NCBI RefSeq assembly: GCF_006345805.1
Contig: NC_043025.1
Coordinates: forward strand, 12,958,001-13,022,000
Length of the DNA: 64,000 nt
From: Octopus sinensis
Taxonomy: Eukaryota
Direction: 5' to 3'
Shown piece by piece: positions 25,451-47,233 of this stretch. Below the pieces are notes generated by a model that saw nothing but the letters and a program-made list of their open reading frames with translations, was not told the DNA's origin and made no database searches. Position numbers and translations under genes: made by a program. How positions within the stretch are numbered: position 1 is the first letter of the stretch; each line of letters opens with the position of its first letter.

Positions 25451-25490
<40 letters not shown>

Positions 25491-25779
25491 ATAAAATTAA
25501 GATATGTCTAGATCTGTCTAACTTAATAGCACCACCTGATAGCCTCGAGTTTGACAAAAGCTTTGTGAGTGGATTTGGGAGATGGAAACTATAAGAAGCC
25601 TATGATGTGTGTATATATATATGTATATATATATTTACAAAACAATTTTTCATTCAAGTAACGGAACGCAAAGCCCCTAGATCGGCTTTTATTAACATCG
25701 AGGGCAGCAGCAAAACTGCAGATTTTTTTTCCACCACCCCGACTTTAGATTATCATAACTTGCAGGAAAATGGATATGT

Positions 25780-26200: not shown

Positions 26201-26207
26201 GTTTAAT

Positions 26208-27184: not shown

Positions 27185-27226
<42 letters not shown>

Positions 27227-27307
27227 ATACATTACACATGAAATGTATTTATTTATTTTACTTTACTTGGATCTTTTCCTTTTGAACGGCAGTTTTTAAC
27301 ATAATTC

Positions 27308-28010: not shown

Positions 28011-28896
28011 AATTCTTTGTTATATTTAAAATAATTGAAAGAAACACAGAGCATCTCAACAGAAATACGGTAATGAAAGGGTTAAATCGGATAAATTGAG
28101 TGGAGTTTTGAGTTTAATGCTTGTCTCCATAAATTTCTTTTTGAAAAACAAAAAACGGCGTAGAGCAGAAAGAGATGTAAGCCGATATGAAATAAGTTGA
28201 GGTATGCCTACACACACACACACACACACGTGTATAGGCAATCAGTGAATATTAAGGTCAAGGTGCAGGTTTTACAGTTTGCTTAGGAATCAGTTCGTGT
28301 CTGGGCGTTTGTTCTTTTTCCTGCCTTGACATGTTTATTTATCCCTTAATAGACAAAACTGATCCTTTTTAACAAAAGGACATGTCACTCGAAGGGTACA
28401 AGAGGATCTGAAACAGCTGTGTGTATGTATGTGTATTTGTGTAATTATGTGTATAAATACGTCTACATATATATGTGTGTGTAATTAATATTCTCTCTTT
28501 TTACTCTTTTACTTGTTTCAGTCATTTGACTGTGACCATGCTGGAACACCGCCTTTAGTCGAGCAAATCGACCCCAGGACTTATTCTTTGTAAGCCTAGT
28601 ACTTATTCTATCGGTCTCTTTTGCCGAACCGCTAAGTTACGGGGAAGTAAACACACCAGCATCGGTTGTCAAGCAATGTTGTGGGGACAGGCATATATAC
28701 ACACACACATACATACATATATACATATATATGACAGGATTCTTTCAGTTTCCGTCTACCAAATCCAGTCACAAGGCTTTGGTCGGCCTGAGGCTATAGC
28801 AGAAGACACTTGCCCAAGGTGCCACACAGTGGGACTGAACCCGAAACCATGTGGTTGGGAAGTAAGCTACTTACCACACAGCCACTCCTACGCCTG

Positions 28897-28933
<37 letters not shown>

Positions 28934-29361
28934 TATATACGATGGGCTTCTTTCAGTTTCTGTCTACCAAATCCACTCACAAGGCTTTGGTCGGCCCGAG
29001 GCTATAGCAGAAGACACTTGCCCAAGGTGCCACGCAGTGGGACTGAACCCGGAACCATGTGGTTGGTTAGCAAGCTACTTACCACACAGCCACTCCTGCG
29101 CCTATATATATATGTACATATATACGATGGGCTTCTTTCAGTTTCCGTCTACTAAATCCACTCACAAGGCATTGGTCGGCCCGGGGCTATAGCAGAAGAC
29201 ACTTGCCCAAGGTGCCACGCAGTGGGACTGAACCCGGAACCATGTGGTTGGTGAGCAAGCTACTTACCACACAGCCAAGCAGTATTAATATGGAAAGGTA
29301 ATATTTATTCCCCATTTTAAGTGTGTTGTAATCTCTCTTTGGACAGGCCAGTGACAATAAG

Positions 29362-29434
29362 ATGGAGCTGAAGGATGCAATCAATTTATCGGATCTTCGA
29401 GAAAGCTCCGAGGCCATGTTTGAACTGAAGAAAG
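29362..29434 (+). CDS. FKBP6: FKBP6/Shutdown coding exon 1
   Basis: ATG at 29362 after an acceptor at 29346; MELKDAINLSDLRESSEAMFELKK|gtgaaa; phase matches exon 2. A further 5' coding extension cannot be excluded because the 15 nt between acceptor and ATG are open. Confidence 0.75.
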
Positions 29435-29639
29435 GTGAAATTCAAAATGGTAGGTCGTATATTTTGTCCTCTACCTGTCTGTCTCACCTGTACATTATTA
29501 CACGTGTCCTTTATCTCACCTGATCACGTGTCTGTCGGTAGTGTACACCACATTGCTGAAATACCTCTGTCTCCGTGTAGTATCTCGTATGTCTCACCTG
29601 CTGATGTACTTCTGTTGTCCGTCTCATTCATACGTGTAT

Positions 29640-30065
29640 ATGTGTGTGTATATTTGTATATATGTATATATATGCATGTATATGTGTGTATATTTGTATA
29701 TATGTATATATATGCATGTATATGTGTGTATATTTGTATATATGTATATATATGCATGTATATGTGTGTATATTTGTATATATGTATATATATGCATGTA
29801 TATGTGTGTATATTTGTATATATATGTATATATATGCATGTATATTTGTATATATGTATATATATGCATGTATATGTGTGTATATTGTATATATGTATAT
29901 ATATGCATGTATATGTGTGTATATTTGTATATATGTATATATATGCATGTATATGTGTGTATATTTGTATATATGTATATATATGCATGTATATTTGTAT
30001 ATATGTATATATATGCATGTATATGTGTGTATATTTGTATATATGTATATGTATATAGATATATG
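29640..30065. repeat. Compound TA/TG minisatellite (~36-bp unit); similar tracts at 17050-17620, 30780-30990 and 49530-50020
   Basis: tatatttgtatatatgtatatatatgcatgtatatgtgtg repeats. Confidence 0.85.
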
Positions 30066-31236
30066 CATAAGAGTAAAAGAGAGTAAAGAGTATATATTTC
30101 CATCTTTCCGCCATCGGCGGTGTCCTCTTCTTCTTCTTCTGCTGCTGCTGCTCAAACTTGAAAATCGCCATTACAAATTCCCAATTCAACTTCCTTTCTT
30201 CTTCAACTCAACTTCCAGTCGATACCCACAGCAAGTTTAAAGATTTATCTTATTATTTTTCCGTACATCGCACAACAGACATTCATTCGCTGTTACAACA
30301 TACATTTATACGTTGCCACTGTTAAATGTCTCAACTTGTACAATAACTTGATTTGTCTTTCCTATCTTTCTCTACGAAATTTAGCCTTTAAGGCTACCTT
30401 TAAGGCTAACTCAACTCTAGAATATCTGTATCTCTGGAGATATGCTGTGACTGCAAAGACCCGGGCTGCTTTCTGCAGCAATTCCACATGCCCCCTACCC
30501 ATTTAAAGTACCCCGGATCCCGTTGCCCCCGTGCCGCTGGCATGTTAAAAGCTCGAACCGATCGTGACCGATGCCGGACCCCCCGGCCCCTGTGCAGGTG
30601 GCATGTAAAAAGCACCCACTCCACTCACGGAGTGGTTGGCGTTAGGAAGGGCATCCAGCCGTAGAAACTCTGCCAGATCAGACTGGAGCCTGGAGTGGCC
30701 CCTGGCTTCCCAGACCCTGGTCGAACCGTCCAACCCGTGCTAGCGCGGAAAACGGACGTTAAACGATGATGATGATGATGATATGTGTGTGTGTATATTT
30801 GTATATATATATGTATATATATGTGAGTGGATGTGTATGTGCATGTACATATGTTTGTATATATGTGTATATTTGTGTGTATATGTATATACATGTGTGT
30901 ATATGTATATACGTGTGTATATATGTGTATATGTATATACGTGTGTATATACATGCGTATATGTATATGTGTGTATATGTATATACATATAAATGCTATA
31001 ATGGAGAAAGCTGCTTATTAATTAGGTATGTAACAATTACTAGTGACGGCGCATGGCTCAGTGGTTGGTGCGTCGAGCTTATGAACGTGAGGTTGTGAGT
31101 TTGATCCCGGACTGGGCTGTGTGTTGTGTTCTTAAGCAAGACACTTTATTTCATGTTGCTTCTGTTCATTCAGCTGTGATTGTGATTAGTAAGCAAGCTA
31201 CTTACCACACAGCCACTCCTGCGCCTATATATATTT

Positions 31237-31278
<42 letters not shown>

Positions 31279-31473
31279 TCTTTTACTTGTTTCAGTTATT
31301 TGACTGTGGCCATGCTGGAGTACCACCTTTAGTTGAGCAAATCAACCCCAGGACTTCATCTTTGTAACCCTAGTACTTATTCTATTGGTCCATTTTGCCA
31401 AACTGCTAATTTACGGGGGACGTAAAGACACCAGCACCGGTTGTCAAGCGATGTTGTGGGACACACACATATA

Positions 31474-31517
<44 letters not shown>

Positions 31518-31802
31518 ATATATACATACATACATATACATACATACATACATACACACACACATACATACATATATACGACGGGCTTCTTTCAGTTTCC
31601 TTCTACCAAATCCACCCACAAGGCTTTAGTCGGCCCGAGGCTATAGTAGAAGACAGTTACCCCATGTACTACACAGTGGGACTGAACCCAGAACCATATG
31701 GTTGGTAAACAAGCTATTTACCACACAACCACTCCTGCACCTTGTATATATATGTATATGGATGTTTTTCTACACAATCTGTTTATCTTTGTGTTTCTTC
31801 AG

Positions 31803-32018
31803 ATTCTGAGCTTCAAGACCTGGAAGGTGGTGACCGCTGGAATCACGAGGACTTCAAGAACTTGTACAACGATATAGCATTTGACAATGACATCATCACA
31901 ATGCCATACGCGGAGCAAGCCCTCAACATGACCGACATATCTGGAGATGGAGGTGTCCGCAAGATCAAGGTTAGGTCTGGACAAGGACCTCTCGTACCAT
32001 CCGATGCTGTCGTCCAAG
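31803..32018 (+). CDS. FKBP6: FKBP6 exon 2
   Basis: ag| ... |gtaagc; 216 bp; ...MPYAEQALNMTDISGDGGVRKIKVRSGQGPLVPSDAVVQ, resembling the FKBP6 region LDISGDRGVLK. Confidence 0.92.
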
Positions 32019-32529
32019 GTAAGCTTACCTCATCTCTTTCAGTTTGACAGGCACACACCTGCCCCTAAATATACTCTGTGCTACTAAGTCCGGATGCTGA
32101 CAGAATCGTTAGCATGGGCAAAATGGTTAGCGAGCTGGCAGAAACATTAGCACGTCTGGCGAATTGCGTTGCGGTATTTCGTCTGCCGTTACGTTGTGAG
32201 TTCAAATTCCGCCGTGGTCGACTTTGCCTTTCATCCTTTCGGGGTCGATAAATTAAGTACCAGTTACGCACTGGGGTCGATGTAATCGACTTAATACCTA
32301 TGTCTGTCCTTGTTTGTCCCCTCTATGGCTTTGTGCCAAAATTTGAAACCAATCTATGTACAAGTGTGGTTGCATGATGAGAAGTTTGCTTCTCAACCAT
32401 AGTTTTGGGTTCAGTCCCACTGCATGGAACTTTGGGCAAGCGTTTCCTGCTGTAGCCCCAGGGCAACCAAAGCCTTGTAGGCGGAAACTAAAAGAAGCCT
32501 CCCATATATATATATATATATATAGATGG

Positions 32530-33420
32530 CACCATCATGGATTCTTTTCATGTGGTACCAGCACGGGTGCTTACCATGTGGTACCATCATGGATGCTTTT
32601 TATGTGGTACCAGCACATGTGCTTTCCATGTGGTACCATTACGGATGGTTTTGATGTGGTACCAGCACAGGTGCTTTCCATGTGGTACCATCACGGATGC
32701 TTTTGATGTGGTACCAGCACAGGTGCTTTCCATGTGGTACCATCACGGATGCTTTTGATGTGGTACCAGCACAGGTGCTTTTCATGTGGTACCATCACGG
32801 ATGCTTTTGATGTGGTACCAGCACAGGTGCTTTCCATGTGGTACCATCATGGATGGTTTTGATGTGGTACCAGCACAGTGTGCTTTCCATGTGGTACCAT
32901 CACGGATGCTTTTGATGTGGTACCAGCACAGGTGCTTTCCATGTGGTACCATCACGGATGCTTTTGATGTGGTACCAGCACAGGTGCTTTTCATGTGGTA
33001 CCATCACGGATGCTTTTGATGTGGTACCAGCACAGGTGCTTTCCATGTGGTACCATCACGGATGCTTTTGATGTGGTACCAGCACAGGTGCTTTCCATGT
33101 GGTACCATCACGGATGCTTTTGATGTGGTACCAGCACAGGTGCTTTTCATGTGGTACCATCACGGATGCTTTTGATGTGGTACCAGCACAGGTGCTTTCC
33201 ATGTGGTACCATCACGGATGCTTTTGATGTGGTACCAGCACAGGTGCTTTTCATGTGGTACCATCACGGATGCTTTTGATGTGGTACCAGCACAGGTGCT
33301 TTTCATGTGGTACCAGCACAGGTGCTTTTCATGTGGTACCAGCACAGGTGCTTTTCATGTGGTACTAGACAGGGTGCTTTTTATGTAGTACCAACTGGTA
33401 CTTTTTACATGGTACCAGCA
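32530..33420. repeat. Minisatellite, ~45-46-bp dimeric unit (two GGTACC-containing ~23-bp halves)
   Basis: gtggtaccatcacggatgcttttgat + gtggtaccagcacaggtgctttccat, repeated ~18 times. Confidence 0.9.
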
Positions 33421-33600
33421 CATGTGCTTTTTATGTGACATGAGCATGACTGCTTTTTACATGGTGTCAGCTTGGTGCCCCTTTTATATGGCACCTTCAC
33501 AGATGCCTTGTACATGACTCTAGCACAATAACAAAATCATTAATCCTTAAGCAAGACATAACGCTTTAATTTGAACCCCTTTCCCCTCTTTCTTCCCCAG

Positions 33601-33690
33601 TGCATTACACGGGGTTCTTTGAATTTGCTGATGAGCCCTTCGATTCCAGCAGACTGAGGGGGGAAGTCTTCAAGTTCCGGCTAAGAAAAG
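33601..33690 (+). CDS. FKBP6: FKBP6 exon 3 (FKBP domain)
   Basis: ccccag| ... |gtgagt; (V)HYTGFFEFADEPFDSSRLRGEVFKFRLRK. Confidence 0.95.
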
Positions 33691-33859
33691 GTGAGTTAAT
33701 TCTTCATTGTTCTAACGTATGTTTGTATGATCCCTAAATGTTGTTATGTATTCTGGGCTGTTGTTGTTTAACCCCAGGCTATCCCTGATCCCGTGATCTT
33801 ATGATCAAAGTTCTTGCCTGCGTGGGTATTATTTATTGCAGCTGTTGCCATCAGAGTGC

Positions 33860-34138
33860 AACAGATAGCACCAGGTATTGCATTGCATCCTACAGTTTCA
33901 CTATCTCCTAGCACCAGGTATTGCATCCTACAGTTTCACTATCTCCTAGCACCAAGTATTGCATCCTACAGTTTCACTAACTCCTAGCACCAGGTATTGC
34001 GTCCTACAGTTTCACTAACTCCTAGCACCAGGTATTGCATCCTACAGTTTCACTAACTCCTAGCACCAGGTATTGCGTCCTACAGTTTCACTAACTCCTA
34101 GCACCAGGTATTGCGTCCTACAGTTTCACTAATTCCTA
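33860..34138. repeat. 37-bp tandem repeat, ~7 units
   Basis: ctagcaccaggtattgc(a/g)tcctacagtttcacta(a/t)ctc. Confidence 0.9.
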
Positions 34139-34457
34139 ATCCTGCTTCAGTGTTTTATCAACCCCTGAAAAGACAAAGTGTGATGCCAAACCTCCCCAAG
34201 AATTATGTTAAGGGTATGCGTGTCTGTGGAGTACTCAGCCACTTGTATGTTAATTTAATGAACAGGAAGAGGATGTGACAAGAACGACCCTTTTGGGGTG
34301 GGGGGTCCTAGGCAGCATGTAAATATCCAATATAGAGAGCCAGAATAAACCTAAGTTTAAAATGTTGACACAAGGCCAGCAATTTCAGTGCCGGGTGGGG
34401 GAGTTGATTACTTCAACACCCCCCAGTACCCGAAGGGACAAGTTGACCTTGGAATAA

Positions 34458-35266
34458 TCTATATCTATAAAGCTGAAGTTGTCTCTGTGTGTGTATGTGG
34501 CAGGTTTGGTAGCCTTCATCTGACACTATCTCCTCCGAGACCCTGCGGCGCAAGTTGACCAAATTGAGAGTATGATAGAAGAAGGCTTGCTCTTCCTTCC
34601 GTAGAAGATAAAATTCAAATCAGACTATGTTAACACCAAAAATTATTTACATCAAAAAGGTGCTTTTTTTCTATGAAAATCCCTCTTTTTTACGATTTTT
34701 TGACTGCTGTGTTGCCATTTTTCAGTATATTTTAACCAGAAAAATGTTCACACAACCCTTTCGTTACCAACCCGGCCAAAGCTGGCTCTGGCTCTGTAGT
34801 ACAAATGTCTTGTTTCCATAAGTTTTGAATTAAAATCTTCCACCAAACCTTAGTCGCAATTTATGTTCCTAACACTTGTTTAATGGTGAACTAAGTTATT
34901 TTACTAAATTCTTTGTTATATTTAAAATTAATTGAAAGGAACACAGAGCATCTCAACAGAAATATAGTAACGAAACGGTTAAAAAGAATAACAAGCTACA
35001 TACTGCAAAATTTTTACTTAGAATTCCAATTCTAAAGGGCCAAAAAGAATTTTTTTTCTCCATTCTGTTAATAGAAAGAATATTGACCAACAATTGAAGT
35101 CGGCATTACACATTTGCAGCACATTCAGAGTAAACTCGACCATTGCCACTCTTATACTGTTATCCATAGCTAGAAACTATGTCAAAACTTTGTTAACGCG
35201 ACATCAAAGTCTGCCGTTTTAAGCACAACTAAAAGACAAACCCGGGCAACGCTGGGCAATACTGCT
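34458..35266 (+). mobile_element. Helitron-like family 2 copy with a nested MITE (~34755-34980)
   Basis: 5' A|TCTATATCTATAAAG, 3' hairpin cccgggcaacgctgggc; the nested element has aaccctttcgttac / gtaacgaaacggtt ends. Confidence 0.65.
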
Positions 35267-35299
35267 TCAATCATTCCAACGATACTCTCTTCGTTACAG

Positions 35300-35431
35300 A
35301 TATGGTAATCCCAGGCTGGGTGATAGCTGTGACCACCATGCAGGTTGGAGAGCTGTCGCGGTTTCTAATCAGCCCCGAGTATGGATTTGGTGACTTTGGG
35401 TGTCCACCGAGGATCCCCCAGTCCATCACAG
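35300..35431 (+). CDS. FKBP6: FKBP6 exon 4 (FKBP domain)
   Basis: ttacag| ... |gtcagt; (D)MVIPGWVIAVTTMQVGELSRFLISPEYGFGDFGCPPRIPQSIT. Confidence 0.95.
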
Positions 35432-35574
35432 GTCAGTATTTTCCATTTATTGAATTGAATTTTACCATTTTGGTGCAATCAATCATGTGATAGATTATTG
35501 ATTTTCATTGAGTCAATCACTGGTCGATGGCAGTTGTCGACGATGCATGACTACTAGTTAGGGTGTGGGTTCCT

Positions 35575-36000
35575 CCTGGGCCGGGTGATGTATTGGGTCC
35601 CTAAGCCAGGCATATCCTTTCCTCTGGTGCTCCAGTTGGAAATGTGTTCCACTGTGGCTCTACAACAACGTCCAGCAAACTGGACTCTCCCACCTTTCAC
35701 AAGAGATGACACAGGTGGTAGTTTCCCATATATTTGTACTTTGGTTGGATGACACTTCCACAAGAGAACCCTAATCATCATCATCATCATCATCATTGTT
35801 CAACCGTGGTCGAGACAATGGAATTTACCATGCTATGCCAGACTTCACAGTCCATCATGGCATTACGGAGGTCCTGTTGCTGGATGCCTGTATCCCTGGA
35901 GATTACATCAGGGTAGGAGAGTGTGCGCCCTCTGGTATTGCGAGCATATGGCTTCCAGAGGAGAAGAGTAGAAATTACTTCGTTTTCAGCTCCACAAGGT
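35575..36000 (-). mobile_element. RTE-like LINE 3' terminus, rearranged second copy
   Basis: Near-identical to 13138-13430, in permuted order. Confidence 0.65.
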
Positions 36001-36473
36001 CATTACCAGTGTTGTTGGACTGACTCCTGTGCAGGTGGCACGTAAAAAGCACCATTTGAGCGTGGCTGTTGCCAGTACCGCCTGACAGGCCCTCGTGCTA
36101 GTGGCACGTAAAAGCACTCACTACTCTCTTGGAGTGGTTGGCATTAGGAAGGGCATCCAGCTGTAGAAACTCTGCCAGATCAAGATTGGAGCCTGGTGCA
36201 GCTATCTGGTTCGCCAGCCCTCAGTCAAATCCTCCAACCCATGCCAGCATGGAAAGCAGACGTTAAATGATGATATATATGTATATATTTGTGTGTTTGC
36301 ATGTTTCACGATTAATTCAAAAGAATGTGAATAAATGAAACCTTCAGTTTGACAAAGAAATCTGGGAGGGTTTTAACCACCACACATCCAAGGTTGACTG
36401 CTATTTCTAGCATTTCCCTTCTACCTCCACAGGACCTCAAATATTCCTGTCTTTCTTTCTTTCTCTCTTTCAG

Positions 36474-36544
36474 CTCTCTTTGAGATTGAACTCTTGTCCT
36501 TTGTCGAAGACGCTGGCATTGAAGATTATTTTCAAATGACGGAA
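36474..36544 (+). CDS. FKBP6: FKBP6 exon 5
   Basis: tttcag| ... |gtaaat; (A)LFEIELLSFVEDAGIEDYFQMTE. Confidence 0.92.
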
Positions 36545-36639
36545 GTAAATATCTCTTCTCTTCATTTCACTTCTCCCCTTCACTTCTCTCTGTTTCTCCT
36601 CTTCATTTCCTCTTCGCTTCTTCTCTTTGTTTCTCCTCT

Positions 36640-37125
36640 TCATTTCCTCTTCGTTTCATTTCCTCTTCTCTTCGTCTCTCCTTTTCGTCTCTCCTCTTCG
36701 TCTCTCCTCTGTCTCTCCTCTTCGTCTCTCCTCTTCGTCTCTCCTCTTCGTCTCTCCTCTTTGTCTCTCCTCTTCGTCTCTCCTCTGTCTCTCCTCTTCG
36801 TCTCTTCTCCTCGTCTCTTCTCTTCGTCTCTCCTCTTCGTCTCTTCTCTTCGTCTCTTTTCGTCTCTCCTCTTCGTCTCTCCTCTTCGTCTCTCCTCTTC
36901 GTCTCTCCTCTTCGTCTCTCCTCTTCGTCTCTCCTCTTCGTCTCTCCTCTTCGTCTCTCCTCTTCGTCTCTTCTCTTCGTCTCTTCTCTTCGTCTCTCCT
37001 CTTCGTCTCTTCTCTTCGTCTCTCCTCTTTGTCTCTCCTCTTCGTCTCTCCTCTTCTTTCCTCTTCTTCTCTCCTCTTCTTTCCTCTTCTTCTCTCCTCT
37101 TCGTCTCTCTCCTTCGTCTCTCCTC
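36640..37125. repeat. Pyrimidine-rich 13-bp repeat (ctcctcttcgtct)n
   Basis: Directly visible; fills FKBP6 intron 5. Confidence 0.9.
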
Positions 37126-37219
37126 TTATTTTCCTATTCATTCCACAATTTCTTTCATTTCTTTCCATCCTTTGTTTCTATCTAGTTTTTCATTCACTTT
37201 TTGGTTTCCCATTTTCCAG

Positions 37220-37279
37220 GAAGAGAAAAGTCAGATTCCATTTGACCAAATCCTAAAGATTGCCAACATGGAGAAATCG
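37220..37279 (+). CDS. FKBP6: FKBP6 exon 6
   Basis: ttccag| ... |gtaaat; 60 bp, phase 0; EEKSQIPFDQILKIANMEKS. Confidence 0.88.
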
Positions 37280-37619
37280 GTAAATAGACCTCTTTTGTTC
37301 TACACCCATTTCTACTCGCTTACATACATGTATATATTGTCTGTCACTGACTTGTTTCAATCATTGGATTGCGGCCATACTGGGACACCATCTTGAAGAA
37401 TTTTTCTTTGAATGACTCAACCTCTGTACTAATTCTTCTTCTAAGCCTGGTCCTTATTCTACCAGTCCCTTTTGCCAAACTGCTAAACCCACCAAAACTG
37501 ATTGTCAAGCGGTAGTGGAGGGGTCAAACATAGACACACAGACACAACAGGTCGCCAAGTAACTTGCTGAAGATCTCTCTACTGGGATGAGTAGTATTGA
37601 TGGACAGAAAAGTGTCTTG

Positions 37620-37706
<87 letters not shown>

Positions 37707-37710
<4 letters not shown>

Positions 37711-38090
37711 GCTGTGTGGTAAGTAGCTTGCTAACCAACCACATGGTTCCGGGTTCAGTCCCACTGCGTGGCACCTTGGGCAAGTGTCTTCTGCTATAGC
37801 CCCGGGCCGACCAATGCCTTGTGAGTGGATTTGGTAGACGGAAACTGAAAGAAGCCTGTCGTATATATGTTTATATATATATGTATATATATGTGTGTGT
37901 GTTTGTCCCCCTAGCATTGCTTGACAACCAATGCTGGTGTGTTTACGTCCCCGTCACTTAGCGGTTCGGCAAAAGAGACCGATAGAATAAGTACTGGGCT
38001 TATAAAGGATAAGTCCCGGGGTCGATTTGTTCGACTAAAGGCGGTGCTCCAGCATGGCCGCAGTCAAATGACTGAAACAAGTAAAAGAGA
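37707..38090 (+). mobile_element. Abundant tRNA-headed SINE with an internal (TA/CA)n (family A), full copy
   Basis: gtggctgtgtggtaagtagcttgc..gggttcagtccc..aaacaagtaaaagag. Further copies at 12105-12540, 20090-20477, 28500-29278, 31275-31742, 43255-43745 and 45775-46615 (all minus), plus fragments. Confidence 0.8.
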
Positions 38091-39591
38091 AAGAGATATA
38101 TATATATATATATATAGATATAGGTTGTTGTTGACTAATGACCACAATTGGTTCCAACTGACTGGTCCTAAGTCGAGTTGATCGTAAGTTTTCCTATAGG
38201 GCTGCATTTTCTTTCTTTTTTATTTATGCGCCCTTTTCAAGCCTAGCCAGGTTCACGGGCCTGGTTTCCCTGTTTGTATGGCATATGTGTTCCCCCCCAG
38301 CTGGACGGGTCGCCAGTCCATCGCAGCGTTACTCAAGAAACAGGAAGAAAGAGTGAGAGAAAGTTGGGGCGAAAGAGTACAACAGGGGTCGCCACCACCC
38401 CCTGTCGGAGCCTCGTGGAGCTTTAGGTGTTCTCGCTCGATAAACACACAACGCCCGGTCTAGGAATCAAAGCCGCGATCCTACAACTGCGAGTCCGCTA
38501 CCCTAACCACTGGGCCATTGCGCTTCCATAGGGTTGCATAGATTTGTTTTATATTTTTACATTCTTACGGTACATTCTCAGGTAAAAGTCACACACAGCA
38601 TTCTGTATTATATTATTATACTGGCATTGCGAAGACCTGTTGGGGCAAGTGAAATCGGAATCGAAATTGAACCAATCCTATGACTGGCACCCGGCAGATG
38701 CCAGGACCCCTGGACTGGAGATACGTAAAAAGCACTATCCGAATCGTGGCTGAAGCCAGTGCTGCCTCGACTGGCTTCTGTGCAGGTGGCACGTAAAATG
38801 CAATCCGACCGTGGCCGATGCCAGTGCCGCCTCGACTGGCTTCCGTGCAGGTGGCACGTAAAATGCACCAATCCGACTGTGGCCGATGCCAGCCTCGCCT
38901 GGCACCAGTGCAGGTGGCACGTAAAAAGCACCCACTACACTCACGGAGTGGTTGGCGTTAAGAAGGGCATCCAGCTGTAGAAACATAGCCAGATAAGACC
39001 GGAGCCTGGTGCAGCCTTCTGGCTTCCCAGATCCCCGGTCGAACCGTCCAACCCATGCTAGCATGGAGAACGGATGTTAAACGATGATAATGATGGTGAT
39101 TAGTAAAAAAAATTTGGAGTCTCAATCATTCGTCTTATAAACAAATATGAGGTTACCTCAATGTCTCCGCAACAGGATAGTCATCCAACACAGTGGCGGT
39201 CGATGATTAAACCTAGGGGGATTGTTTATTAGCTGACATCATCCACAGAATATAAACTTTTCTAAAAAAACTCTAAGAGTAAAAGACGTTTTATATGACA
39301 CATTCTACCTATCTATCCTAACAAACACACACCCTAACCAACCTGTCCTTATATACACACAAGTATACACACCCACTTACCTGTCCCAATTTGTAAAACG
39401 CCTTAGCGTTGTTCTTGTCAATTGCCAGTATACGGAGTTCGAAAGTGTTTAGTTACAAAACATTATTTTCTAAATCTGCCGGTCAAACGGTAAAGATCCG
39501 ATTTTCTTTTATCTCCTCTGTGTTGTATAATGTAGAGCTGTCTGTTAAGTTAGACACAAATAATCTCCATTTTTACTTCTTTTTCTTACAG

Positions 39592-39651
39592 TTTGGTACA
39601 GAATTCTTTAATGCCAAGAAAATTCGAAAGTCTTACAACAAATACCGTTTG
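39592..39651 (+). CDS. FKBP6: FKBP6 exon 7 (TPR1)
   Basis: ttacag| ... |gtaagt; FGTEFFNAKKIRKSYNKYRL. Confidence 0.88.
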
Positions 39652-39659
39652 GTAAGTAC

Positions 39660-40690
39660 TGTTCTGTTGTGAGGTGGTTCTGTTGTTGTTGTGGCATTGT
39701 GAGGTGGTCATCTTTTGGTCATGGTGTTGTTAGGCGGATGTTTTGTGGTGTTGGGAAGCAACTGTCTTGTGACTGGTGTTGTGAGGTCTGCTTATCCTGT
39801 TGTGAGGTGGTTCTGTTGTGGTTGTGGCATTGTGAAGTGACCATCTTTTGGTCATGGTGTTGTTAGGCGGATGTTTTGTGGTGTTGGGAAGCAACTGTCT
39901 TGTGACTGGTGTTGTGAGGTCTGCTTATCCTGTTGTGAGGTGGTTCTGTTGTGGTTGTGGCATTGTGAAGTGGCCATCTTTTGGTCATGGTGTTGGGAAG
40001 CAACTGTCTTGTGACTGGTGTTGTGAGGTCTGCTTATCCTGTTGTGAGGTGGTTCTGTTGTGGTTGTGGCATTGTGAAGTGACCATCTTTTGGTCATGGT
40101 GTTGTTAGGCGGATGTTTTGTGGTGTTGGGAAGCAACTGTCTTGTGACTGGTGTTGTGAGGTCTGCTTATCCTGTTGTGAGGTGGTTCTGTTGTGGTTGT
40201 GGCATTGTGAAGTAGCCATCTTTTGGTCATGGTGTTGTTAGGCGGATATTTTGTGGTGTTGGGAAGCAACTGTCTTGTGACTGGTGTTGTGAGGTCTGCT
40301 ATCCTGTTGTGAGGTGGTTCTGTTGTGGTTGTGGCATTGTGAAGTGACCATCTTTTGGTCATGGTGTTGTTAGGCGGATATTTTGTGGTGTTGGGAAGCA
40401 ACTGTTTTGTGACTGGTGTTGTGAGGTCTGCTTATCCTGTTGTGAGGTGGTTCTGTTGTGGTTGTGGCATTGTGAAGTGGCCATCTTTTGGTCATGGTGT
40501 TGTTAGGCGGATGTTTTGTGGTGTTGTGAGGTGGTTCTGTTGTGGTTGTGGCATTGTGAGGTGGTCATTTTTTGGTCATGGTATTGTTAGGCGGATGTTT
40601 TGTGGTGTTGGGAAGCAACTGTCTTGTAATTGTGATTGTGGTGTTGTGAGGTCGTCTGCTTGTTATCGTGTTGTTAGGTGGTTCTGTTGT
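39660..40690. repeat. GT-rich composite tandem repeat (~105-125-bp unit)
   Basis: gtgaggtggttctgttgtggttgtggcattgtgaagt..ggtgttgggaagcaactgtcttgtgactgg, repeated ~8 times and filling FKBP6 intron 7. Confidence 0.88.
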
Positions 40691-40730
40691 CTCCCCTAGC
40701 TAATCCTTCCTTCTGCTGTTCCCATTGCAG

Positions 40731-40928
40731 GCCCTTCTGGTACTCGACGAGTATGTGACGTGCAACAGTGAAGAGGAACGTCAGATCCAAGGGTTACGCC
40801 TTTTGGTTCTCCTAAACATGGCCCTCTGTTGTCTCCGTCTCAACAATGCCACCAAGGCCATCACATACTGCCAGAAAGCTCTGGCAATTGACAAGAACAA
40901 CGCTAAGGCGTTTTACAGATTGGGACAG
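40731..40928 (+). CDS. FKBP6: FKBP6 exon 8 (TPR2-3)
   Basis: ttgcag| ... |gtaagt; ALLVLDEYVTCNSEEERQIQGLRLLVLLNMALCCLRLNNATKAITYCQKALAIDKNNAKAFYRLGQ. Confidence 0.95.
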
Positions 40929-41725
40929 GTAAGTGTGTATATTTGTGTGTAGGGTGTGTATATTTGTGGTTAGGGTGTGTGTTTGTTAGGGTAGATAGGC
41001 AGGAGCATGAGGGTCTCAGCTAATCTTCATCTCAATCAAAGGAGAGGGGCTTTCTCCGTCCGGGTTGCGGATCCGTGGGATAAGCTGCCGGACGAGATGG
41101 TGAAGATGCCGACGACCGCTCGGTTCAAAGTCTCTCTTGACCAGAAATGGCCTGAACTCTTTACATGAACACCCTCCCTGTACATAACTCCATGTCACCC
41201 TACATGGCCTTGCTTTTTGCTTTTTGAGCCAAAAAATTAAGTTAACTTAATACGACCAATGAAACAGCTTGCTCGTGAAATTAGCATCCAAGTGGCTGAG
41301 TACTCCACAGACATGTGTACCCTTAACGTATTTCTCAGGGAGATTCAGTATGACACAGAATGTGACGAGGTTGACCCTTTCAAATACAGGTACTACTCAT
41401 TTTTGTCAGCTGAGTGGACTGGAGCAACGTGAAATAAAGTGTCTTGCTCAAGGACACGTGTCGCTGGGATTTGAACTCACGACCTTACAATAGTGAGCCG
41501 GATGCCCTAACCACTAAGCCATGCGCCTTCACTAGGATAGTTAGGTGCATGTGTGTATATTATGACGATGATGTGTGTATCATCATCATCTGTTTTCTGG
41601 ATTGGATGGTTTGATTGGAGCTGGAAATGGGTGGTGTTTTAAGTACCACTAGTATGGGTGCTAGTTACATGACACCAGCACCAGCCACAACTAGGATTTA
41701 ACTTGGCGTTTTGCTCGTGTATATA

Positions 41726-41756
<31 letters not shown>

Positions 41757-42194
41757 TCATCATCGTTTAACGTCCGCTTTCCATGCTAGCATTGGTTGGA
41801 CGGTTCAACTGTCTGGGAAGCCAGGAGGCTGCACCAGGCTCCAGTCTGATCTGGCAGTGTTTCTACAGCTGGATGCCCTTCCTAACGCCAACCACTCTGT
41901 GAGTGTAGTGGGTGCTTTTTACGTGCCACCGGCACAGGTGCCAGACGAGGCTGGCAAATGGTCACGATCGGATGGTGCTTTTTACATGCCACCTGCACTG
42001 GTATCAGATTTTGATTTTGATATATATATATATTTGGACATGTATGCATATACAGATGTATTTGTGTATGTGTATTAAACTAATGAATGTGTGTTTTGAG
42101 ATTTAGCTGCTATGTCTAGAAGGTTAAGTGATCACCTGCCTCAGGGTGTTATTGTTGTTGTTAATGATGTCTGTCTGTTTGTCTCCTTCTGCAG

Positions 42195-42304
42195 GCATAC
42201 CAGATGCTGGGCAAATACGACGAGGCAGTCACCAACCTGAAGCTGGCTCAGAAGTTGCGGCCAACAGATCCGAATGTTTCACAACAACTGCAGAAACTGC
42301 ACAG
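42195..42304 (+). CDS. FKBP6: FKBP6 exon 9 (TPR3)
   Basis: ctgcag| ... |gtgagt; AYQMLGKYDEAVTNLKLAQKLRPTDPNVSQQLQKLH. Confidence 0.93.
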
Positions 42305-42962
42305 GTGAGTTAGGAGGGACCAGGGTTGGCACAGGTGGGCCGAGGTAGGTTGGAGGGACCAGGGGTGGTGCAAGTGGGCCGAGATAGGGTGAAGGGACCA
42401 GGGTTGGCACAGGTGGGCTGAGGGAGGTTGGAGGGACCAGGGTTGGCATGAGTGGGCCGAGGTAGGTTGGAGGGACCAGGGTTGGCACAAGTGGGCTGAG
42501 GTAGGTTGGAGGGACCAGGGTTGGCATGAGTGGGCCGAGGTAGGTTGGAGGGACCAGGGTTGGCACAAGTTGGCCGAGGGAGGTTGGAGGGACCAGGGTT
42601 GGCACAAGTGGGATGAGGTAGGTTGGAGGGACCGGAGTTGGCACAAGTGGGATGAAGTAGGTTGGAGGGACCGGGGTTGGCACAAGTGGGATGAAGTAGG
42701 TTGGAGGGACCGGGGTTGGCACAAGTGGGATGAAGTAGGTTGGAGGGACCGGGGTTGGCACAAGTGGGCTGAGGTACGTTGGAGGGACCAAGGGTGGTGC
42801 AAGTGGGCTGAGGTAGGTTGGAGGGACCAGGGTTGGCAGAAGTGGGCTGAGGTAGGTTGGAGGGACCTGAGTTGACACAAGTGGGATGGAGTACGTTGGA
42901 GGGACCGGGGTTGGCACAAGTGGGATGAGGTAGGTTGGTGGGACTGGGGGTGGTGCAAGTGG
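42305..42962. repeat. 39-bp G-rich tandem repeat starting at the exon 9 donor
   Basis: gaggtaggttggagggaccagggttggcacaagtgggct, ~17 units. Confidence 0.9.
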
Positions 42963-43158
42963 GGTAAAATAAGCTGGACTCTTCGGGATTGGGTGGGTGG
43001 ACTGACCATCCTGTTATTTTATCAAGCAATTAAACCTGCTATGTCCAGTCACGATATTCTATTTGCTTTAAATGTTCAAACCTATTATACTCGAGGATTT
43101 CCTGTACCCTCACACTCACTCACTCACTCTCTCTCTCTCTCTTTCTCTCTTCCCTCAG

Positions 43159-43244
43159 TGATGTCCTCCAATACAAAGAAGACGAGAAAGCAATGTACAA
43201 GAAAATGTTTTGCCAAACCACAAAGAAATCACAGTCATCTTTAT
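43159..43244 (+). CDS. FKBP6: FKBP6 exon 10
   Basis: cctcag| ... |gtaagt; (S)DVLQYKEDEKAMYKKMFCQTTKKSQSSL, with the MYKKMF motif typical after FKBP-TPR domains. Confidence 0.9.
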
Positions 43245-43388
43245 GTAAGTACGAGCAAATCGACCCCCAGGACTTATTCTTTTGTAAGCCTAGTACTTAT
43301 TCTATTGGTCTCTTTTACTGAACCACTAAGTTACGGGGACGTGAACACATTAGCATTGGCTGTCAAGCGATGTTGGGGAGACAGACAC

Positions 43389-43423
<35 letters not shown>

Positions 43424-44550
43424 CGACAGGCTTCTTTCAGTTTCCGTCTATCAAATCCTCTCACAAGTCTTCGGTTGGCCCAAGAAATCCACTCGCAAGG
43501 CTTTGGTCGGCCCGAGGCTATAGTAGAAGACAGTTGCCCAAGGTACCATGCAGTGGGACTGAACCCAGAACCATGTGGTTGGTAAGCAAGCTACTTACCA
43601 CACAGCCACTCTTGAATGGCCTTCTTTCATGTTCCATCTACCAAATCCTCTCGTAAGGATTTTGGTTGGCCCAAGGAGCCACACAGTAAAACTGAACCTG
43701 GGACCATATGGTTGGGAAGCAAGCTTCTTACCACACAGCCATGCTTATACATATACACACACACACATACCCTGTTCAACATCCTGCCAAACTACTTCAT
43801 AGATTTGCGAGGGGTGGATGTGGAGGTCTTCAATGAATGTCAAGACCCAATTTTTCTCTGGGGTAGTAAACAAACCCACACCGTGGCAGGCGGCACAAAG
43901 AGCAGCAGCTCTATCCAACCCACTAGTTGGCAAAGAAGCCCGAAATTTATTAAAAGGCAGTGCTCCAGCGTGGCCTTGGCCCCTGACAAATTAGTTAAAG
44001 ATCATCATCATCATCATTGTTTAACGTCCGCTTTCCATGCTGGCATGGGTTGGACGGTTCAACTGGGGTCTGGGAAGCCAGGAGGCTGCACCAGGCCCCG
44101 GTCTTATCTGGCAATGTTTCTACAGCTGGATGCCCTTCCTAACGCCAACCACTCCAAGAGTGTAGTGGGTACTTTTTACGTGCCATCTGCACTGGTGCCA
44201 GGCGAGGCTGGCATCGGCCACGGTCGGATTGGTGCATTTTACGTGTCGTCTGCACGGAAGCCAGTCGAGGCGGCACTGGCTTCGGCCACGATTCGGATAG
44301 TGCTTTTTACGTGCCACCGACACGGAAGCCCGTCGAGGCGGCGCTAAGGACTTAGTTTTGTTGTGAAACTATTTTTTGGATATATTCTGTATTCTTTGTC
44401 ATATGGCACCAGTGTCAGACTGGATGGTCACATCTGGAACATTTTTGTTATAGGTCCACTAGATCGGCTAAATGACAATACAAACAACAGCAACATATTT
44501 TTTATTCATTTCTAAGATTTTTGTCTCCTTTTTTTGTTTCTCTTGTGCAG

Positions 44551-44644
44551 TTCCTTCGAATCGGGAGAACATGGTTCAGGAATCGGACGAGAAAGTTGTC
44601 GAAGTTTCTGAAGAATTTAAAGAAAACGTCAACAAGTACCTTAA
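44551..44644 (+). CDS. FKBP6: FKBP6 exon 11
   Basis: gtgcag| ... |gtgagt; phase-compatible; (F)PSNRENMVQESDEKVVEVSEEFKENVNKYL. Confidence 0.82.
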
Positions 44645-45014
44645 GTGAGTGTCCTGTCGTTTACATTGAGGGTCATCATCATCATCATCATCATCATCAC
44701 CATCATAATCACTATCACCGTCATCATCATCACCACCGCCTGTGCCTCCAATAGAAAGGATTATTATTATTAAGGCAGTGAGCTGGCAGAATTGTTAGCA
44801 TGTTGGGAAAACTACTCAGTGGCATTTTGTCCCTCTTTGTTCTGAGTTCAAATCCCGCCAAAGTCAACTTAGCCTTTCATCCTTTTGGGGTCAGTAAGTT
44901 AAGTACTAGTCAAATACTGGGGTATCAGTGTTATTGGCTTACCCCCCCCTCCCACGCAATTACTGGCTTTGTGCCAAAATGTGGAACGAATATTATTGAG
45001 GTTTTGCCTGTAAT

Positions 45015-45545
45015 TGAAAAAAGGTATTATAAAAGGAGAAAGGGGCTCTCTACCCCCCTTTTGACTAGGTTCCCGTGGCTTAAGTACCTTAAGTGAGTGT
45101 CTTGTCGTTTACATTGAGGGTCATCATTATTTAACCCTTTAGCATTCAGATTACCGTAAATCCTCAAGTATAGCCCGCCCTTGTGTATAATACGCAGGGG
45201 ATTTTTAGGGGGCTGTACCTCTGAAAAACCTAAACCTTGTGTATAATACGCACCCCTTCTCTAACTAGAGTAGAAGGTTTTTATAACATCCTTGGTTTGT
45301 AAAAATGTATACGCTAACGTCCTTTATTATTATTGTATATGGGTTTTTCTATGTGAGACCTTTCCTTTTTTCGAAGCGTCTCCTCTATTGGGAGTTTTGT
45401 AAATTGTTGAATTTTTTCGTTGTTGTAAAGCTTGTTTACATGGCCCTTTTTTCTTTCGAAAAACGGACAAAACCTTTTTGTCCCTTTATGTTTTCCGATC
45501 ATGTTTGTCACCCCTTGTGGCCAATAAAAAGAATTAATTATTATT
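45015..45545 (+). mobile_element. 3'-UTR fragment of a related Tx1-like LINE in FKBP6 intron 11, interrupted at ~45081-45335
   Basis: 45015-45080 and 45340-45545 match the 3' UTR of the 53-kb LINE (aaaaggagaa...ctctctac, gtctcc...ttgggagtttt, aaacggacaaaacc, ccttgtggccaataaaaagaatt + (att)n). Confidence 0.8.
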
Positions 45546-45571
45546 ATCATTATTTATTTTTGCTATTGCAG

Positions 45572-45698
45572 GAACTTCCTCTCAGACAATTGCCGGAGTG
45601 AGTGTCCAATGCCAGCCTCCAGTATGACCGTGGCCGAGATAGCCTATGTCCTCGAAATGGTTGACGATATGAAACTCACAGCTGTACAGACTGGTTCG
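45572..45698 (+). CDS. FKBP6: FKBP6 exon 12 (R3H-like module)
   Basis: ttgcag| ... |gtgagt; (K)NFLSDNCRSECPMPASSMTVAEIAYVLEMVDDMKLTAVQTGS. Confidence 0.82.
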
Positions 45699-47143
45699 GT
45701 GAGTTTGGTTGGCTTCTTGGATATCGTGGCACCAGTGGCGCCACCATCCTCATCTCTAGATCCTTCCTGTCACATACTCTTTTACTTGTTTCAGTCACTT
45801 GACTGCGGCCATGCTGGAGCACCGCCTTTAGTCGAGCCAATCGACTCCCATGACTTATTCTTTGTAAGCCTAGTACTTATTCTATCAGTCTCTTTTGCTG
45901 AACTGTTAAGTAACGGGGTGTAAACACACCAGCATCAGTTGTCAAGCAATACTAGGGGGACAAACACAGACACACAAACATATATACACACATATATATA
46001 CATATATGTATACATATATATGACAGGCTTTCAGTTTCCGTCTACCAAATCCACTCACAAGGCTTTGGTCGGCCCGAAGCTATAGTTAATTTACGGGGAT
46101 GTAAACACACAACATTGGTTGTCAAGCGATGGTGGGTGGGTGGGACACAAACATATACACACACATACATACATACATACATATATATACACACACACAT
46201 ACATATATATATATATACACACATACATATACATATATGTATACATATATATGACAGGCTTTCAGTTTCCGTCTACCAAATCCACTCACAAGGCTTTGGT
46301 CGGCCCGAAGCTATAGTTAAGTTACGGGGATGTAAACACACCAACATTGGTTGTCAAGCGATGGTGGGTGGGTGGGACACAAACATATACACACACATAC
46401 ATACATACATACATATATATACACACACACATACATATATATATATATACACACATACACACACACACACACATATACGATGGGCTTCTTTCAGTTTCCG
46501 TCTATCAAATCCATTCACAATGCTTTGGTCAGCCTGCGGTGCCGCGCAGTGGGACTGAATCCGGGGAACCATGTGGTTGGTAAGCAAGCTACTTACCACA
46601 CAGCCACTCCTGCGCCTTAATTAAACAATTTAATAAAATACTTAAGTCATTAATTAATTTGGAGCTTAGAACATAAATTAACATGATTTTACGAGGGAGT
46701 ATTTTAATTGCAATCATTTTTAAGCAGGAAATTTGTATCATGGAAACGATGGCAGATTTTGTATCAAAAGGAGTGTTGGTCATAAGTGGCTCCCAAGTTA
46801 GTTTTATGTTACTTGATTGGGAGTACAGCCTCAGTCTAGTTTCTGTGGAAACTCACTTGATTTACTCCCCAACCCCACACCACTTAGTGTTTAACTTCAC
46901 TCAAGATAGTCTACAGCTCCACTCCAGTTGATTCACAGCTCCACTCGGAATACATCCTCAGTTTGATTTCTGTTCAATCTCACTTGATTTACTTCTCACC
47001 CCCACTCCGCTTCGTGTTTAACCTCACTCAAGATAGTCTACGGCTCCACTCCAGTTGCTTCCGCAGCACCACCACTCATGTGACTCTCCAGCTTCACTCC
47101 ACCGATGTCTCTCCCCTAACCCCCTCTATTCGTCTATTTTCAG

Positions 47144-47233
47144 GGTGAGAACATCCAGATCGAAATCCGTAAGAACCGCAACAACACGAGCAACAACAGG
47201 AGAGTGAAGAAGCGTGAAACGGTGTGGCGGTGA
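47144..47233 (+). CDS. FKBP6: FKBP6 exon 13, last coding exon
   Basis: tttcag|GGTGAG; GENIQIEIRKNRNNTSNNRRVKKRETVWR*. The 13 exons sum to 1407 nt (468 aa plus stop) with no internal stop. Confidence 0.8.
   Translation, partial: GENIQIEIRKNRNNTSNNRRVKKRETVWR

What the first reader, a model, noticed from the sequence alone, without database searches (positions are those of the whole stretch)
44590..47175. FKBP6/Shutdown carries a C-terminal degenerate R3H-like domain
Exons 11-13 encode EFKENVNKYLKNFLSDNCRSECPMPASSMTVAEIAYVLEMVDDMKLTAVQTGSGENIQIEIRK. By eye this follows the R3H/SUZ-type pattern (helix-F..D-..-P-S-(l/m)s..eR..vH.la...gL...S.G.g..R.i.i.K), but the signature Arg and His are replaced by Ile and Leu. 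A basic tail follows. As I recall it, mammalian FKBP6 ends soon after the TPR helix. A nucleic-acid-binding-like fold on a piRNA-loading Hsp90 co-chaperone would be mechanistically interesting.
Basis: partly seen in the sequence, partly recalled or inferred. Interest (0 to 1): 0.7.

Follow-up and report, generated by a model that had tools for sequence, protein, structure and literature searches.

The report
FKBP6 carries a motif-less R3H domain
The octopus version of FKBP6/Shutdown, an Hsp90 helper protein needed to make piRNAs, ends in a real, well-conserved extra domain that is a diverged R3H (RNA-binding-type) fold without the RNA-contacting arginine and histidine; the domain is found in FKBP6 from sponges to amphioxus and does not appear in the FKBP6 papers I could search.

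Summary
The window is Octopus sinensis. The three exons (44551-44644, 45572-45698, 47144-47233, + strand) are the last three of 14 coding exons of the NCBI FKBP6-like model (484 aa), which maps exactly with GT-AG introns.

- A profile of 30 FKBP6-like C-termini hits the Smubp-2 R3H structure by sequence (E 6.6e-4).
- Against 1.84 billion proteins it retrieves canonical R3H proteins. All 14 that I checked carry Pfam R3H, and all 10 whose coordinates I compared carry it at the matched residues.
- hhalign against canonical R3H gives 99.2% probability.
- The AlphaFold2 model (pLDDT about 90 in the domain) has R3H domains as its top Foldseek matches.

The octopus sequence alone gets no Pfam R3H hit. 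The R-x3-H motif is I436...L440, and a third RNA-contacting Arg is I459. This loss holds across the family: the Arg survives in 1 of 30 sequences and the His in none.

The domain occurs in sponges, cnidarians, molluscs, an annelid, a brachiopod, a nemertean, a scorpion, a sea star, an acorn worm and amphioxus. It is absent in crabs. It is therefore an ancestral third domain of FKBP6.

Most likely it is a pseudo-R3H used for protein contacts rather than canonical RNA binding. That function is inferred, not shown.

The parts
21495..47233 (+). Whole FKBP6-like coding region. It has 14 coding exons: 21495-21512, 29347-29449, 31803-32018, 33601-33690, 35300-35431, 36474-36544, 37220-37279, 39592-39651, 40731-40928, 42195-42304, 43159-43244, 44551-44644, 45572-45698, 47144-47233 (stop included).
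   Evidence: The concatenated exons translate exactly to P0002 (NCBI, Octopus sinensis, 484 aa). All introns are GT-AG.
32000..36496 (+). FKBP-type PPIase domain (residues 107-194), spread over exons 3-6.
   Evidence: Pfam FKBP_C E 2e-23. PDB human FKBP6 3b7x E 1.6e-28. Coordinates.
37241..43210 (+). TPR region (residues 218-337) and the long post-TPR helix (342-370), exons 7-11.
   Evidence: Pfam TPR_1/TPR_2 hits. AF2 helices H218-337 and H342-370 with pLDDT above 90. FKBP51/52 align over residues 85-378 only.
43159..43244 (+). It is needed to keep exons 12-14 in frame.
   Evidence: Without it the frame ends at a stop in exon 12.
43211..44606 (+). Flexible linker (residues 371-400: CQTTKKSQSSLFPSNRENMVQESDEKVVEV).
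   Evidence: AF2 pLDDT below 50 for residues 374-397. Poorly conserved, 21-40% identity outside octopods.
44607..44644 (+). R3H-like domain, part 1: N-terminal helix (residues 401-413, SEEFKENVNKYLK).
   Evidence: AF2 H402-417. Aligned to the first helix of canonical R3H by hhalign.
45572..45698 (+). R3H-like domain, part 2 (exon 13, residues 413-455): strand 1 (CPMPA), helix 2 carrying E435, I436 (the Arg position of R3H) and L440 (the His position), and strand 2.
   Evidence: Conserved in L001 with 9 synonymous and 2 non-synonymous changes.
47144..47176 (+). R3H-like domain, part 3 (residues 456-466): last strand, with I459 (position of the second RNA-contacting Arg) and the invariant K465.
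   Evidence: K465 is invariant in 30/30 and 35/35 orthologues.
47177..47233 (+). Octopod-specific basic tail RNNTSNNRRVKKRETVWR and the stop codon.
   Evidence: 7 K/R and 1 acidic residue. pLDDT below 50. 0-11% identity outside Octopoda.

Best explanation
The last three coding exons of the Octopus sinensis FKBP6/Shutdown orthologue encode an independently folded domain of about 65 residues (401-466). It is a diverged homologue of the R3H domain, joined to the FKBP-TPR Hsp90 co-chaperone body by a disordered linker of about 25 residues. SHOWN: the exons are real, spliced in frame and under purifying selection. The domain is homologous to R3H by sequence profile and by predicted fold. It lacks the three side chains that contact RNA in solved R3H complexes (Arg->I436, His->L440, second Arg->I459). 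This loss holds across FKBP6-like proteins of many animal phyla, whose domain is net acidic on average. The FKBP-TPR-R3H-like architecture is therefore ancestral in animals and was lost in at least crabs, and by recollection in vertebrates. INFERRED, at about 55% confidence: it is a 'pseudo-R3H' that no longer binds nucleic acid in the canonical way. Instead it would serve as a protein-contact or regulatory module of the co-chaperone, for example by recruiting or positioning a piRNA-pathway client or partner next to the TPR-bound Hsp90. The octopod basic tail is a lineage-specific disordered appendage.
For: Gene model: exact 14-exon map to P0002. Selection: 9 synonymous and 2 non-synonymous changes in exon 13 against L001. 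Domain identity tracks or exceeds TPR identity among molluscs, at 79/61/53/44% against 76/54/42/42%. Homology: the A1 profile hits 1msz (Smubp-2 R3H) at E 6.6e-4. Pfam R3H matches 4 of 30 orthologous tails, best 27.0 bits, E 4.8e-6. The A2 profile gives 360 hits at E<=1e-3 in 1.84e9 proteins. All 10 non-FKBP6 hits checked carry Pfam R3H at the matched residues, and 4 further multi-stretch hits also carry Pfam R3H. hhalign of A2 against canonical R3H gives 99.2%, E 1.8e-19. A mollusc-only profile scores canonical R3H at 28-38 bits against at most 7.1 bits for 2000 shuffles. Fold: AF2 pLDDT is about 90 in the domain, alone and in the full-length model. Foldseek top hits are R3H domains, with TM 0.59-0.73 normalised to the target and rmsd 1.2-2.6 A for 1msz, 2cpm and 2lrr. 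Motif loss: the Arg position is I20/V3/M3/T3/R1, the His position is never His, and mean net charge is -2.2 against +2.4 in canonical R3H. In KhpB-RNA the R, H and a later R contact RNA, and the R/H->A mutant loses binding while keeping its fold (PMC12408800). Distribution.
Against: The octopus sequence alone gives no Pfam R3H hit, and no full-length FKBP6-like protein tested reaches the Pfam cut-off. Foldseek E-values are modest (8e-3 to 5e-2). The canonical R3H set used for hhalign was picked from hits of the same profile, so it is partly circular; the Pfam, PDB and Foldseek results are independent of it. No binding data exist. A non-canonical RNA contact, helped by the Lys-rich residues that often follow the last strand, is not excluded. 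One orthologue (P0016) keeps the Arg. The inter-domain arrangement is unknown (pTM 0.47).
Confidence: 0.85

Rival explanations
1. The domain still binds RNA, for example piRNA intermediates or cleavage by-products, through a non-canonical surface helped by the basic residues after the last strand. It would give the co-chaperone direct contact with the RNA being loaded into PIWI.
For: It is homologous to a single-stranded nucleic-acid-binding fold. K465 is invariant, and many orthologues have K/R-rich residues just after it (KKKK, KRN, and the octopod tail with 7 K/R). FKBP6/Shutdown acts at the PIWI loading step (PMC3463805).
Against: All three RNA-contacting residues are replaced, mostly by aliphatic residues, in 29 of 30 family members, and the domain is net acidic. 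The R/H->A mutation abolishes binding in KhpB. The basic tail is not conserved and is disordered. K465 is also conserved in canonical R3H, where it appears to be structural.
Confidence: 0.2
2. Exons 12-14 belong to a separate small downstream gene (ATG at 44571, about 96 aa), and the FKBP6 model is a false fusion.
For: The TPR exon 42195-42304 spliced directly to 44551 is out of frame and stops after 20 codons. An in-frame ATG exists in exon 12 (MVQESDEK...). The first word-index search with the tail found no annotated protein.
Against: The 86-nt exon 43159-43244 restores the frame with canonical splice sites. A cephalopod transcript contig carries the whole FKBP-TPR-tail ORF uninterrupted (L002). 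The same architecture is annotated independently in more than 10 phyla.
Confidence: 0.03
3. The resemblance to R3H is a chance convergence of a small alpha/beta unit, not homology.
For: The domain is short. The defining R and H are missing. Foldseek E-values are only about 1e-2.
Against: E-values of 1e-7 to 1e-5 to canonical R3H in a 1.84e9-protein library. hhalign 99.2%. Shared FP, LT, E, LGL, GxG and K positions in the same order. Shuffled controls score at most 7 bits against 28-38 bits.
Confidence: 0.02

Closest known systems
R3H domain (Pfam PF01424); solved examples Smubp-2/IGHMBP2 (1msz, 2lrr), SPAG7 (2cpm), bacterial KhpB/EloR (9lrg, 9lri)
   Same: Same predicted fold and order of elements (helix, strand, helix, strand, strand). 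Shared sequence landmarks: L..F..D, FP, LT, E before the Arg position, LGL, GxG and the final K. Found as an accessory domain on a larger multi-domain protein.
   Different: The eponymous Arg and His and the second RNA-contacting Arg are I436, L440 and I459. Net charge is negative rather than positive. The sequence is below the Pfam cut-off. The host protein is a chaperone cofactor, not a helicase, nuclease or RNA-binding protein.
FKBP6 (mammals) / Shutdown (Drosophila), Hsp90 co-chaperones of piRNA biogenesis
   Same: Orthologous FKBP and TPR domains. The best named hits are all FKBP6(-like), and the human FKBP6 FKBP domain 3b7x matches at E 1.6e-28.
   Different: These proteins are described in the papers read as PPIase plus a 'C-terminal TPR domain' only (PMC3463805, PMC8147803). 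Human FKBP6 is 327 aa by recollection, too short for the extra domain. Whether the 455-aa fly Shutdown keeps it was not tested here.
FKBP51/FKBP52 (FKBP5/FKBP4), FKBP8, Cyp40, AtFKBP42: other immunophilin-TPR Hsp90 co-chaperones
   Same: The FKBP (or cyclophilin) plus three-TPR body and the long helix after the TPR align to residues 85-378.
   Different: None of these chains aligns beyond residue 378, so none has an R3H-like C-terminal domain.

Membership tests
R3H domain (PF01424) | Sequence match to the family profile at the curated cut-off (26.8 bits) | tested here: not met
   Octopus tail: no hit at E<=10. Full-length P0002, P0062 and P0086: no hit. P0016 full length scores 23.7 bits. Only the isolated P0016 tail reaches 27.0 bits.
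R3H domain (PF01424) | Remote homology to R3H by profile-sequence and profile-profile comparison | tested here: met
   1msz E 6.6e-4. All 10 non-FKBP6 hits compared carry Pfam R3H at the matched residues, and 4 further multi-stretch hits carry Pfam R3H. hhalign 99.2%. Shuffle control.
R3H domain (PF01424) | R3H fold (three-stranded sheet packed against helices) | tested here: met
   AF2 gives H402-417, E423-427, H433-445, E449-453, E460-464 at pLDDT about 90. The top Foldseek PDB hits are R3H domains. This rests on a predicted structure, not a solved one.
R3H domain (PF01424) | Conserved Arg-x3-His motif in the helix | tested here: not met
   I436 and L440 in octopus. Across 30 orthologues the Arg is kept once and the His never.
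R3H domain (PF01424) | Binding of single-stranded nucleic acid or 5'-phosphorylated nucleotide | not testable with these tools
   Indirect evidence only: the contact residues are lost and the net charge is -2.2.
FKBP6/Shutdown | FKBP-type PPIase domain followed by an Hsp90-class TPR domain | tested here: met
   Pfam FKBP_C E 2e-23 and TPR_1/2. FKBP51/52 align over residues 85-378. The carboxylate-clamp residues were not checked individually.
FKBP6/Shutdown | Closest named relatives are FKBP6 orthologues | tested here: met
   P0002 is identical to the window's protein and is named FKBP6-like. Hits in molluscs, amphioxus, sea star and others carry the same name. 3b7x (human FKBP6) matches at E 1.6e-28. 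No phylogeny was built.
FKBP6/Shutdown | Role in piRNA biogenesis and germline expression | not testable with these tools
   Known for mouse and fly only (PMC3463805, PMC8147803).
SUZ domain (as in R3H-SUZ proteins) | Conserved basic region following R3H that matches the SUZ profile | tested here: not met
   No Pfam SUZ hit. The tail is octopod-specific and disordered.

The most novel reading that the evidence does not exclude
The pseudo-R3H is a functional third arm of the ancestral FKBP6/Shutdown co-chaperone. It would dock a specific piRNA-pathway partner (a PIWI protein, a Tudor/TDRD12-type factor, or the RNA itself by a new binding mode) beside Hsp90. Vertebrates and crustaceans would then have moved this function to another protein when they lost the domain.
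Probability: 0.15. Interest if true: 0.8.

Novelty: new variant of a known kind. Interest (0 to 1): 0.55.

Why it matters
FKBP6/Shutdown is essential for piRNA loading and transposon silencing. Its mechanism is poorly understood, and the papers I could read describe it as a two-domain protein (PPIase plus TPR). This analysis shows that the ancestral animal protein had a third, conserved, folded domain derived from an RNA-binding fold. That gives a concrete and testable handle: what does the domain bind, and what replaced it in lineages that lost it? It also adds a clear case of an R3H fold that has lost its nucleic-acid-contact residues across a whole orthologous family. Finally, it is a domain that standard Pfam thresholds miss in these proteins.

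Tried and rejected
(1) The word-index protein search with the 102-aa tail found only an intron read-through ORF (P0001) and missed the identical annotated protein. The same tool run with the A2 profile returned only two fragments. Both were uninformative. (2) Splicing the TPR exon directly to 44551 gave a frameshift and an early stop. For a while this suggested either a separate 96-aa gene starting at ATG 44571 or that FKBP6 ends at the TGA in the exon-10 donor. I rejected this once exon 43159-43244 was found and a full-length transcript contig was seen. (3) Pfam scans of the octopus tail alone gave only noise: Phage_sheath_domII at E 0.26 and DUF6951 at E 0.13. (4) The top PDB sequence hit, 8v2d, is a designed repeat protein matched by many sub-threshold helix fragments, so I treated it as spurious. 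(5) Literature searches for FKBP6+R3H and for Shutdown+'C-terminal domain' found nothing describing this domain. A search for the human protein length failed, and Preall et al. 2012 is not held. (6) By memory I considered LAMTOR/roadblock-like and other small alpha/beta folds. I dropped them after the Foldseek result.
Full report
WHAT IS THERE. The window is Octopus sinensis. A reconstruction of the FKBP and TPR exons retrieved the NCBI protein 'inactive peptidyl-prolyl cis-trans isomerase FKBP6-like' (P0002, 484 aa) at 100% identity. A spliced mapping shows that P0002 is encoded exactly by 14 + strand coding exons between 21495 and 47233, all with GT-AG introns. They are coding exons 12-14, not 11-13.

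Without it, the TPR exon 42195-42304 joins 44551 out of frame and the protein would stop after 20 codons. That mismatch made a separate downstream gene look possible for a while. The annotated model resolves it.

IS IT REAL CODING SEQUENCE?
- A 974-nt genomic contig from another octopod (L001, SRR11869384) aligns across exon 13 and both splice sites.
- A 1675-nt Logan contig from another cephalopod (L002, SRR8281681) carries an uninterrupted 483-aa ORF with FKBP, TPR and the same tail. Mature transcripts therefore include the domain.
- Among molluscs the domain is at least as conserved as the TPR region: 79/61/53/44% identity against 76/54/42/42% for Argonauta, the Logan cephalopod, Sepia and Sinanodonta.

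IS IT R3H? The octopus tail alone gives no Pfam R3H hit, even at E<=10. Homologous C-terminal regions are present in FKBP6-like proteins of many animals, and I aligned 30 of them (A1, trimmed to A2). The consensus is S..F...V...L..F..D....E.P.P...LT..EI.C..E.A..LGL.....G.G....I.V.K, with K465 invariant and E435 present in 29 of 30. The evidence for homology has five strands.
- A profile of A1 hits the Smubp-2 R3H structure 1msz as a single 49-residue stretch at E 6.6e-4, and 1whr at E 0.5.
- Pfam R3H matches 4 of the 30 tails. P0016 scores 27.0 bits against a cut-off of 26.8 (E 4.8e-6), and P0024 has E 1.1e-3.
- Searched against 1.84 billion representative proteins, the A2 profile finds 360 proteins at E<=1e-3. 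FKBP6-like proteins come first, followed by helicases and other proteins at E 1e-7 to 1e-5. All 10 of those I scanned have a canonical Pfam R3H domain at the very residues matched: Smubp-2-like and YTHDC2-like helicases, DEAH helicases and a G-patch/R3H protein. Four multi-stretch hits are multi-R3H proteins.
- hhalign of A2 against an alignment of those canonical domains gives 99.2% probability, E 1.8e-19 over 65 columns. That set was chosen from the profile's own hits, so the Pfam, PDB and fold results count as the independent evidence.
- A profile built from ten mollusc sequences only scores every canonical domain at 28-38 bits. The best of 2000 shuffles scores 7.1 bits.

FOLD. AlphaFold2 with the 30-sequence alignment gives pLDDT of about 90 over the domain, with the element order helix, strand, helix, strand, strand. 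The top Foldseek PDB matches are, in order, 7zw0_sh, Smubp-2 R3H (1msz, 2lrr), SPAG7 R3H (2cpm) and KhpB (9lrg). From memory, 7zw0_sh is yeast Fap1, an R3H-containing protein. The top four have probability 1.0, and 1msz, 2cpm and 2lrr have rmsd 1.2-2.6 A and target-normalised TM 0.59-0.73. The E-values are modest, 8e-3 to 5e-2.

In a full-length model (35-sequence alignment, mean pLDDT 81.6) the domain (401-466) is again confident. It is separated from the long post-TPR helix (342-370) by a low-confidence linker (374-397). The basic tail (470-484) is disordered. At pTM 0.47 the model gives no reliable inter-domain arrangement. FKBP51/52, FKBP8, Cyp40 and AtFKBP42 align only up to about residue 378.

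WHAT IS DEGENERATE ABOUT IT. The alignments place octopus E435-I436 on the E-R of canonical R3H, L440 on the His, I459 on the conserved Arg of the last strand, and K465 on the conserved Lys.
- Across 30 FKBP6-like sequences the Arg position is I (20), V (3), M (3), T (3) or R (1).
- The His position is never His.
- Mean net charge of the region is -2.2, against +2.4 for the canonical set.
- In the KhpB-RNA crystal structure the motif Arg and His and a later Arg contact the RNA. The R/H->A double mutant keeps its fold but loses binding (PMC12408800).
The FKBP6-like domain thus keeps the structural landmarks of R3H and has lost the known ligand contacts. It has done so in every lineage sampled, which points to an ancient change of function rather than decay.

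DISTRIBUTION. The domain is present in FKBP6-like proteins of these groups:
- cephalopods (Octopus, Argonauta, Sepia), gastropods and bivalves
- an annelid (Owenia), a brachiopod (Lingula) and a nemertean (Tubulanus)
- a scorpion (Centruroides)
- a sea star (Acanthaster), an acorn worm (Ptychodera) and amphioxus
- a hydrozoan (Hydractinia) and sponges (Dysidea, Halichondria, Corticium)

Crab orthologues end shortly after the post-TPR helix (P0038, P0040, P0041, P0043). That mammalian FKBP6 (327 aa) lacks the domain is my recollection and was not tested. Fly Shutdown (455 aa) is long enough to hold it, and that too is untested. The octopod basic tail is not conserved beyond octopods.

HOW IT MOST LIKELY WORKS. 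Shown: it is a folded R3H-derived module on a flexible tether at the C-terminus of an FKBP-TPR Hsp90 co-chaperone, conserved since early animals, without the canonical RNA contacts. Inferred: it acts as a protein-contact or regulatory module, a pseudo-R3H, that brings or positions a partner next to TPR-bound Hsp90 during PIWI loading. I give this about 55%. Non-canonical RNA binding, perhaps helped by the K/R residues that commonly follow the last strand, gets about 20%. The remainder is unknown. A false gene fusion or a chance resemblance are each very unlikely.

NOVELTY. FKBP6 and R3H are both well known. The combination is not described in the literature I could search: FKBP6+R3H returned three unrelated papers, and the Shutdown/FKBP6 papers read describe only PPIase and a 'C-terminal TPR domain'. 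No full-length protein tested reaches the Pfam cut-off, so routine annotation would miss it. Structure-based resources may already flag it, and I could not check that. I rate it a new variant of a known kind, of moderate interest. It offers a specific, testable addition to a protein whose mechanism in piRNA biogenesis remains unclear.

Noticed in passing
window 44634-44682 and 45082-45130: A 49-nt direct repeat (96% identical) duplicates the last 11 nt of coding exon 12 together with its GT donor, 448 nt into the intron. The interval between the copies holds a CAT/CAC microsatellite and SINE-like sequence. It looks like an insertion with a long duplicated flank, and it leaves a decoy 5' splice site.
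   Followed up: partly
window 45980-46534 and 46820-47061: The last intron holds a 231-nt unit repeated 2.4 times (a SINE-like core plus TA/CA microsatellite). It also holds a 127-nt unit repeated 1.9 times, ending about 80 nt before the last acceptor.
   Followed up: no
window 32527-33437, 42313-42963, 39664-40610, 36595-37127: There are large intronic tandem arrays in the FKBP6 gene. A 52-nt unit occurs 16.7 times and is open in all three + strand frames. A 39-nt unit occurs 16.7 times and starts 9 nt after the exon-10 donor. A 133/242-nt array and a 13-nt CT-rich array are also present.
   Followed up: no
window 12651-12914 (+): An open stretch matches the C-terminal half of a ubiquitin-conjugating enzyme core (Pfam UQ_con, E 2.2e-14). 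This is probably an exon of an upstream neighbouring E2 gene.
   Followed up: partly
window 53275-55623 (-) and 56982-57962 (-): A 783-codon open stretch carries reverse transcriptase (RVT_1, E 1.4e-29) and zf-RVT, in the GC-richest part of the window (GC 0.56), consistent with a retrotransposon copy. Just upstream of it on the same (-) strand is a 327-codon open stretch with a long poly-Q run, a Cys/His knuckle-like motif and no Pfam hit.
   Followed up: partly
window 21495-21512: The first coding exon of the FKBP6-like model encodes only six residues (MEGLLN). It is followed by a 7.8-kb intron. A 62-nt unit repeated 3.1 times lies immediately upstream, at 21291-21479.
   Followed up: no
related proteins P0106/P0217 (Argonauta hians): Argonauta has a second FKBP6-like protein (451 aa) that also carries the C-terminal R3H-like domain, in addition to the 498-aa orthologue P0003. 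This may be a paralogue or a second haplotype or assembly copy.
   Followed up: no
representative-library hits P0082-P0101 and similar (50-90 aa): Many short ORFs match only profile positions 13-55, which is exactly the span of octopus exon 13. They are probably single-exon read-through ORFs from genomic contigs of other animals, like P0001. If so, the intron positions flanking this exon are widely conserved.
   Followed up: no
representative-library hit P0067 (6841 aa): A giant protein matches the FKBP6-tail profile in 28 separate stretches, presumably a long array of R3H-type repeats. It was too long for the Pfam tool and I did not examine it.
   Followed up: no
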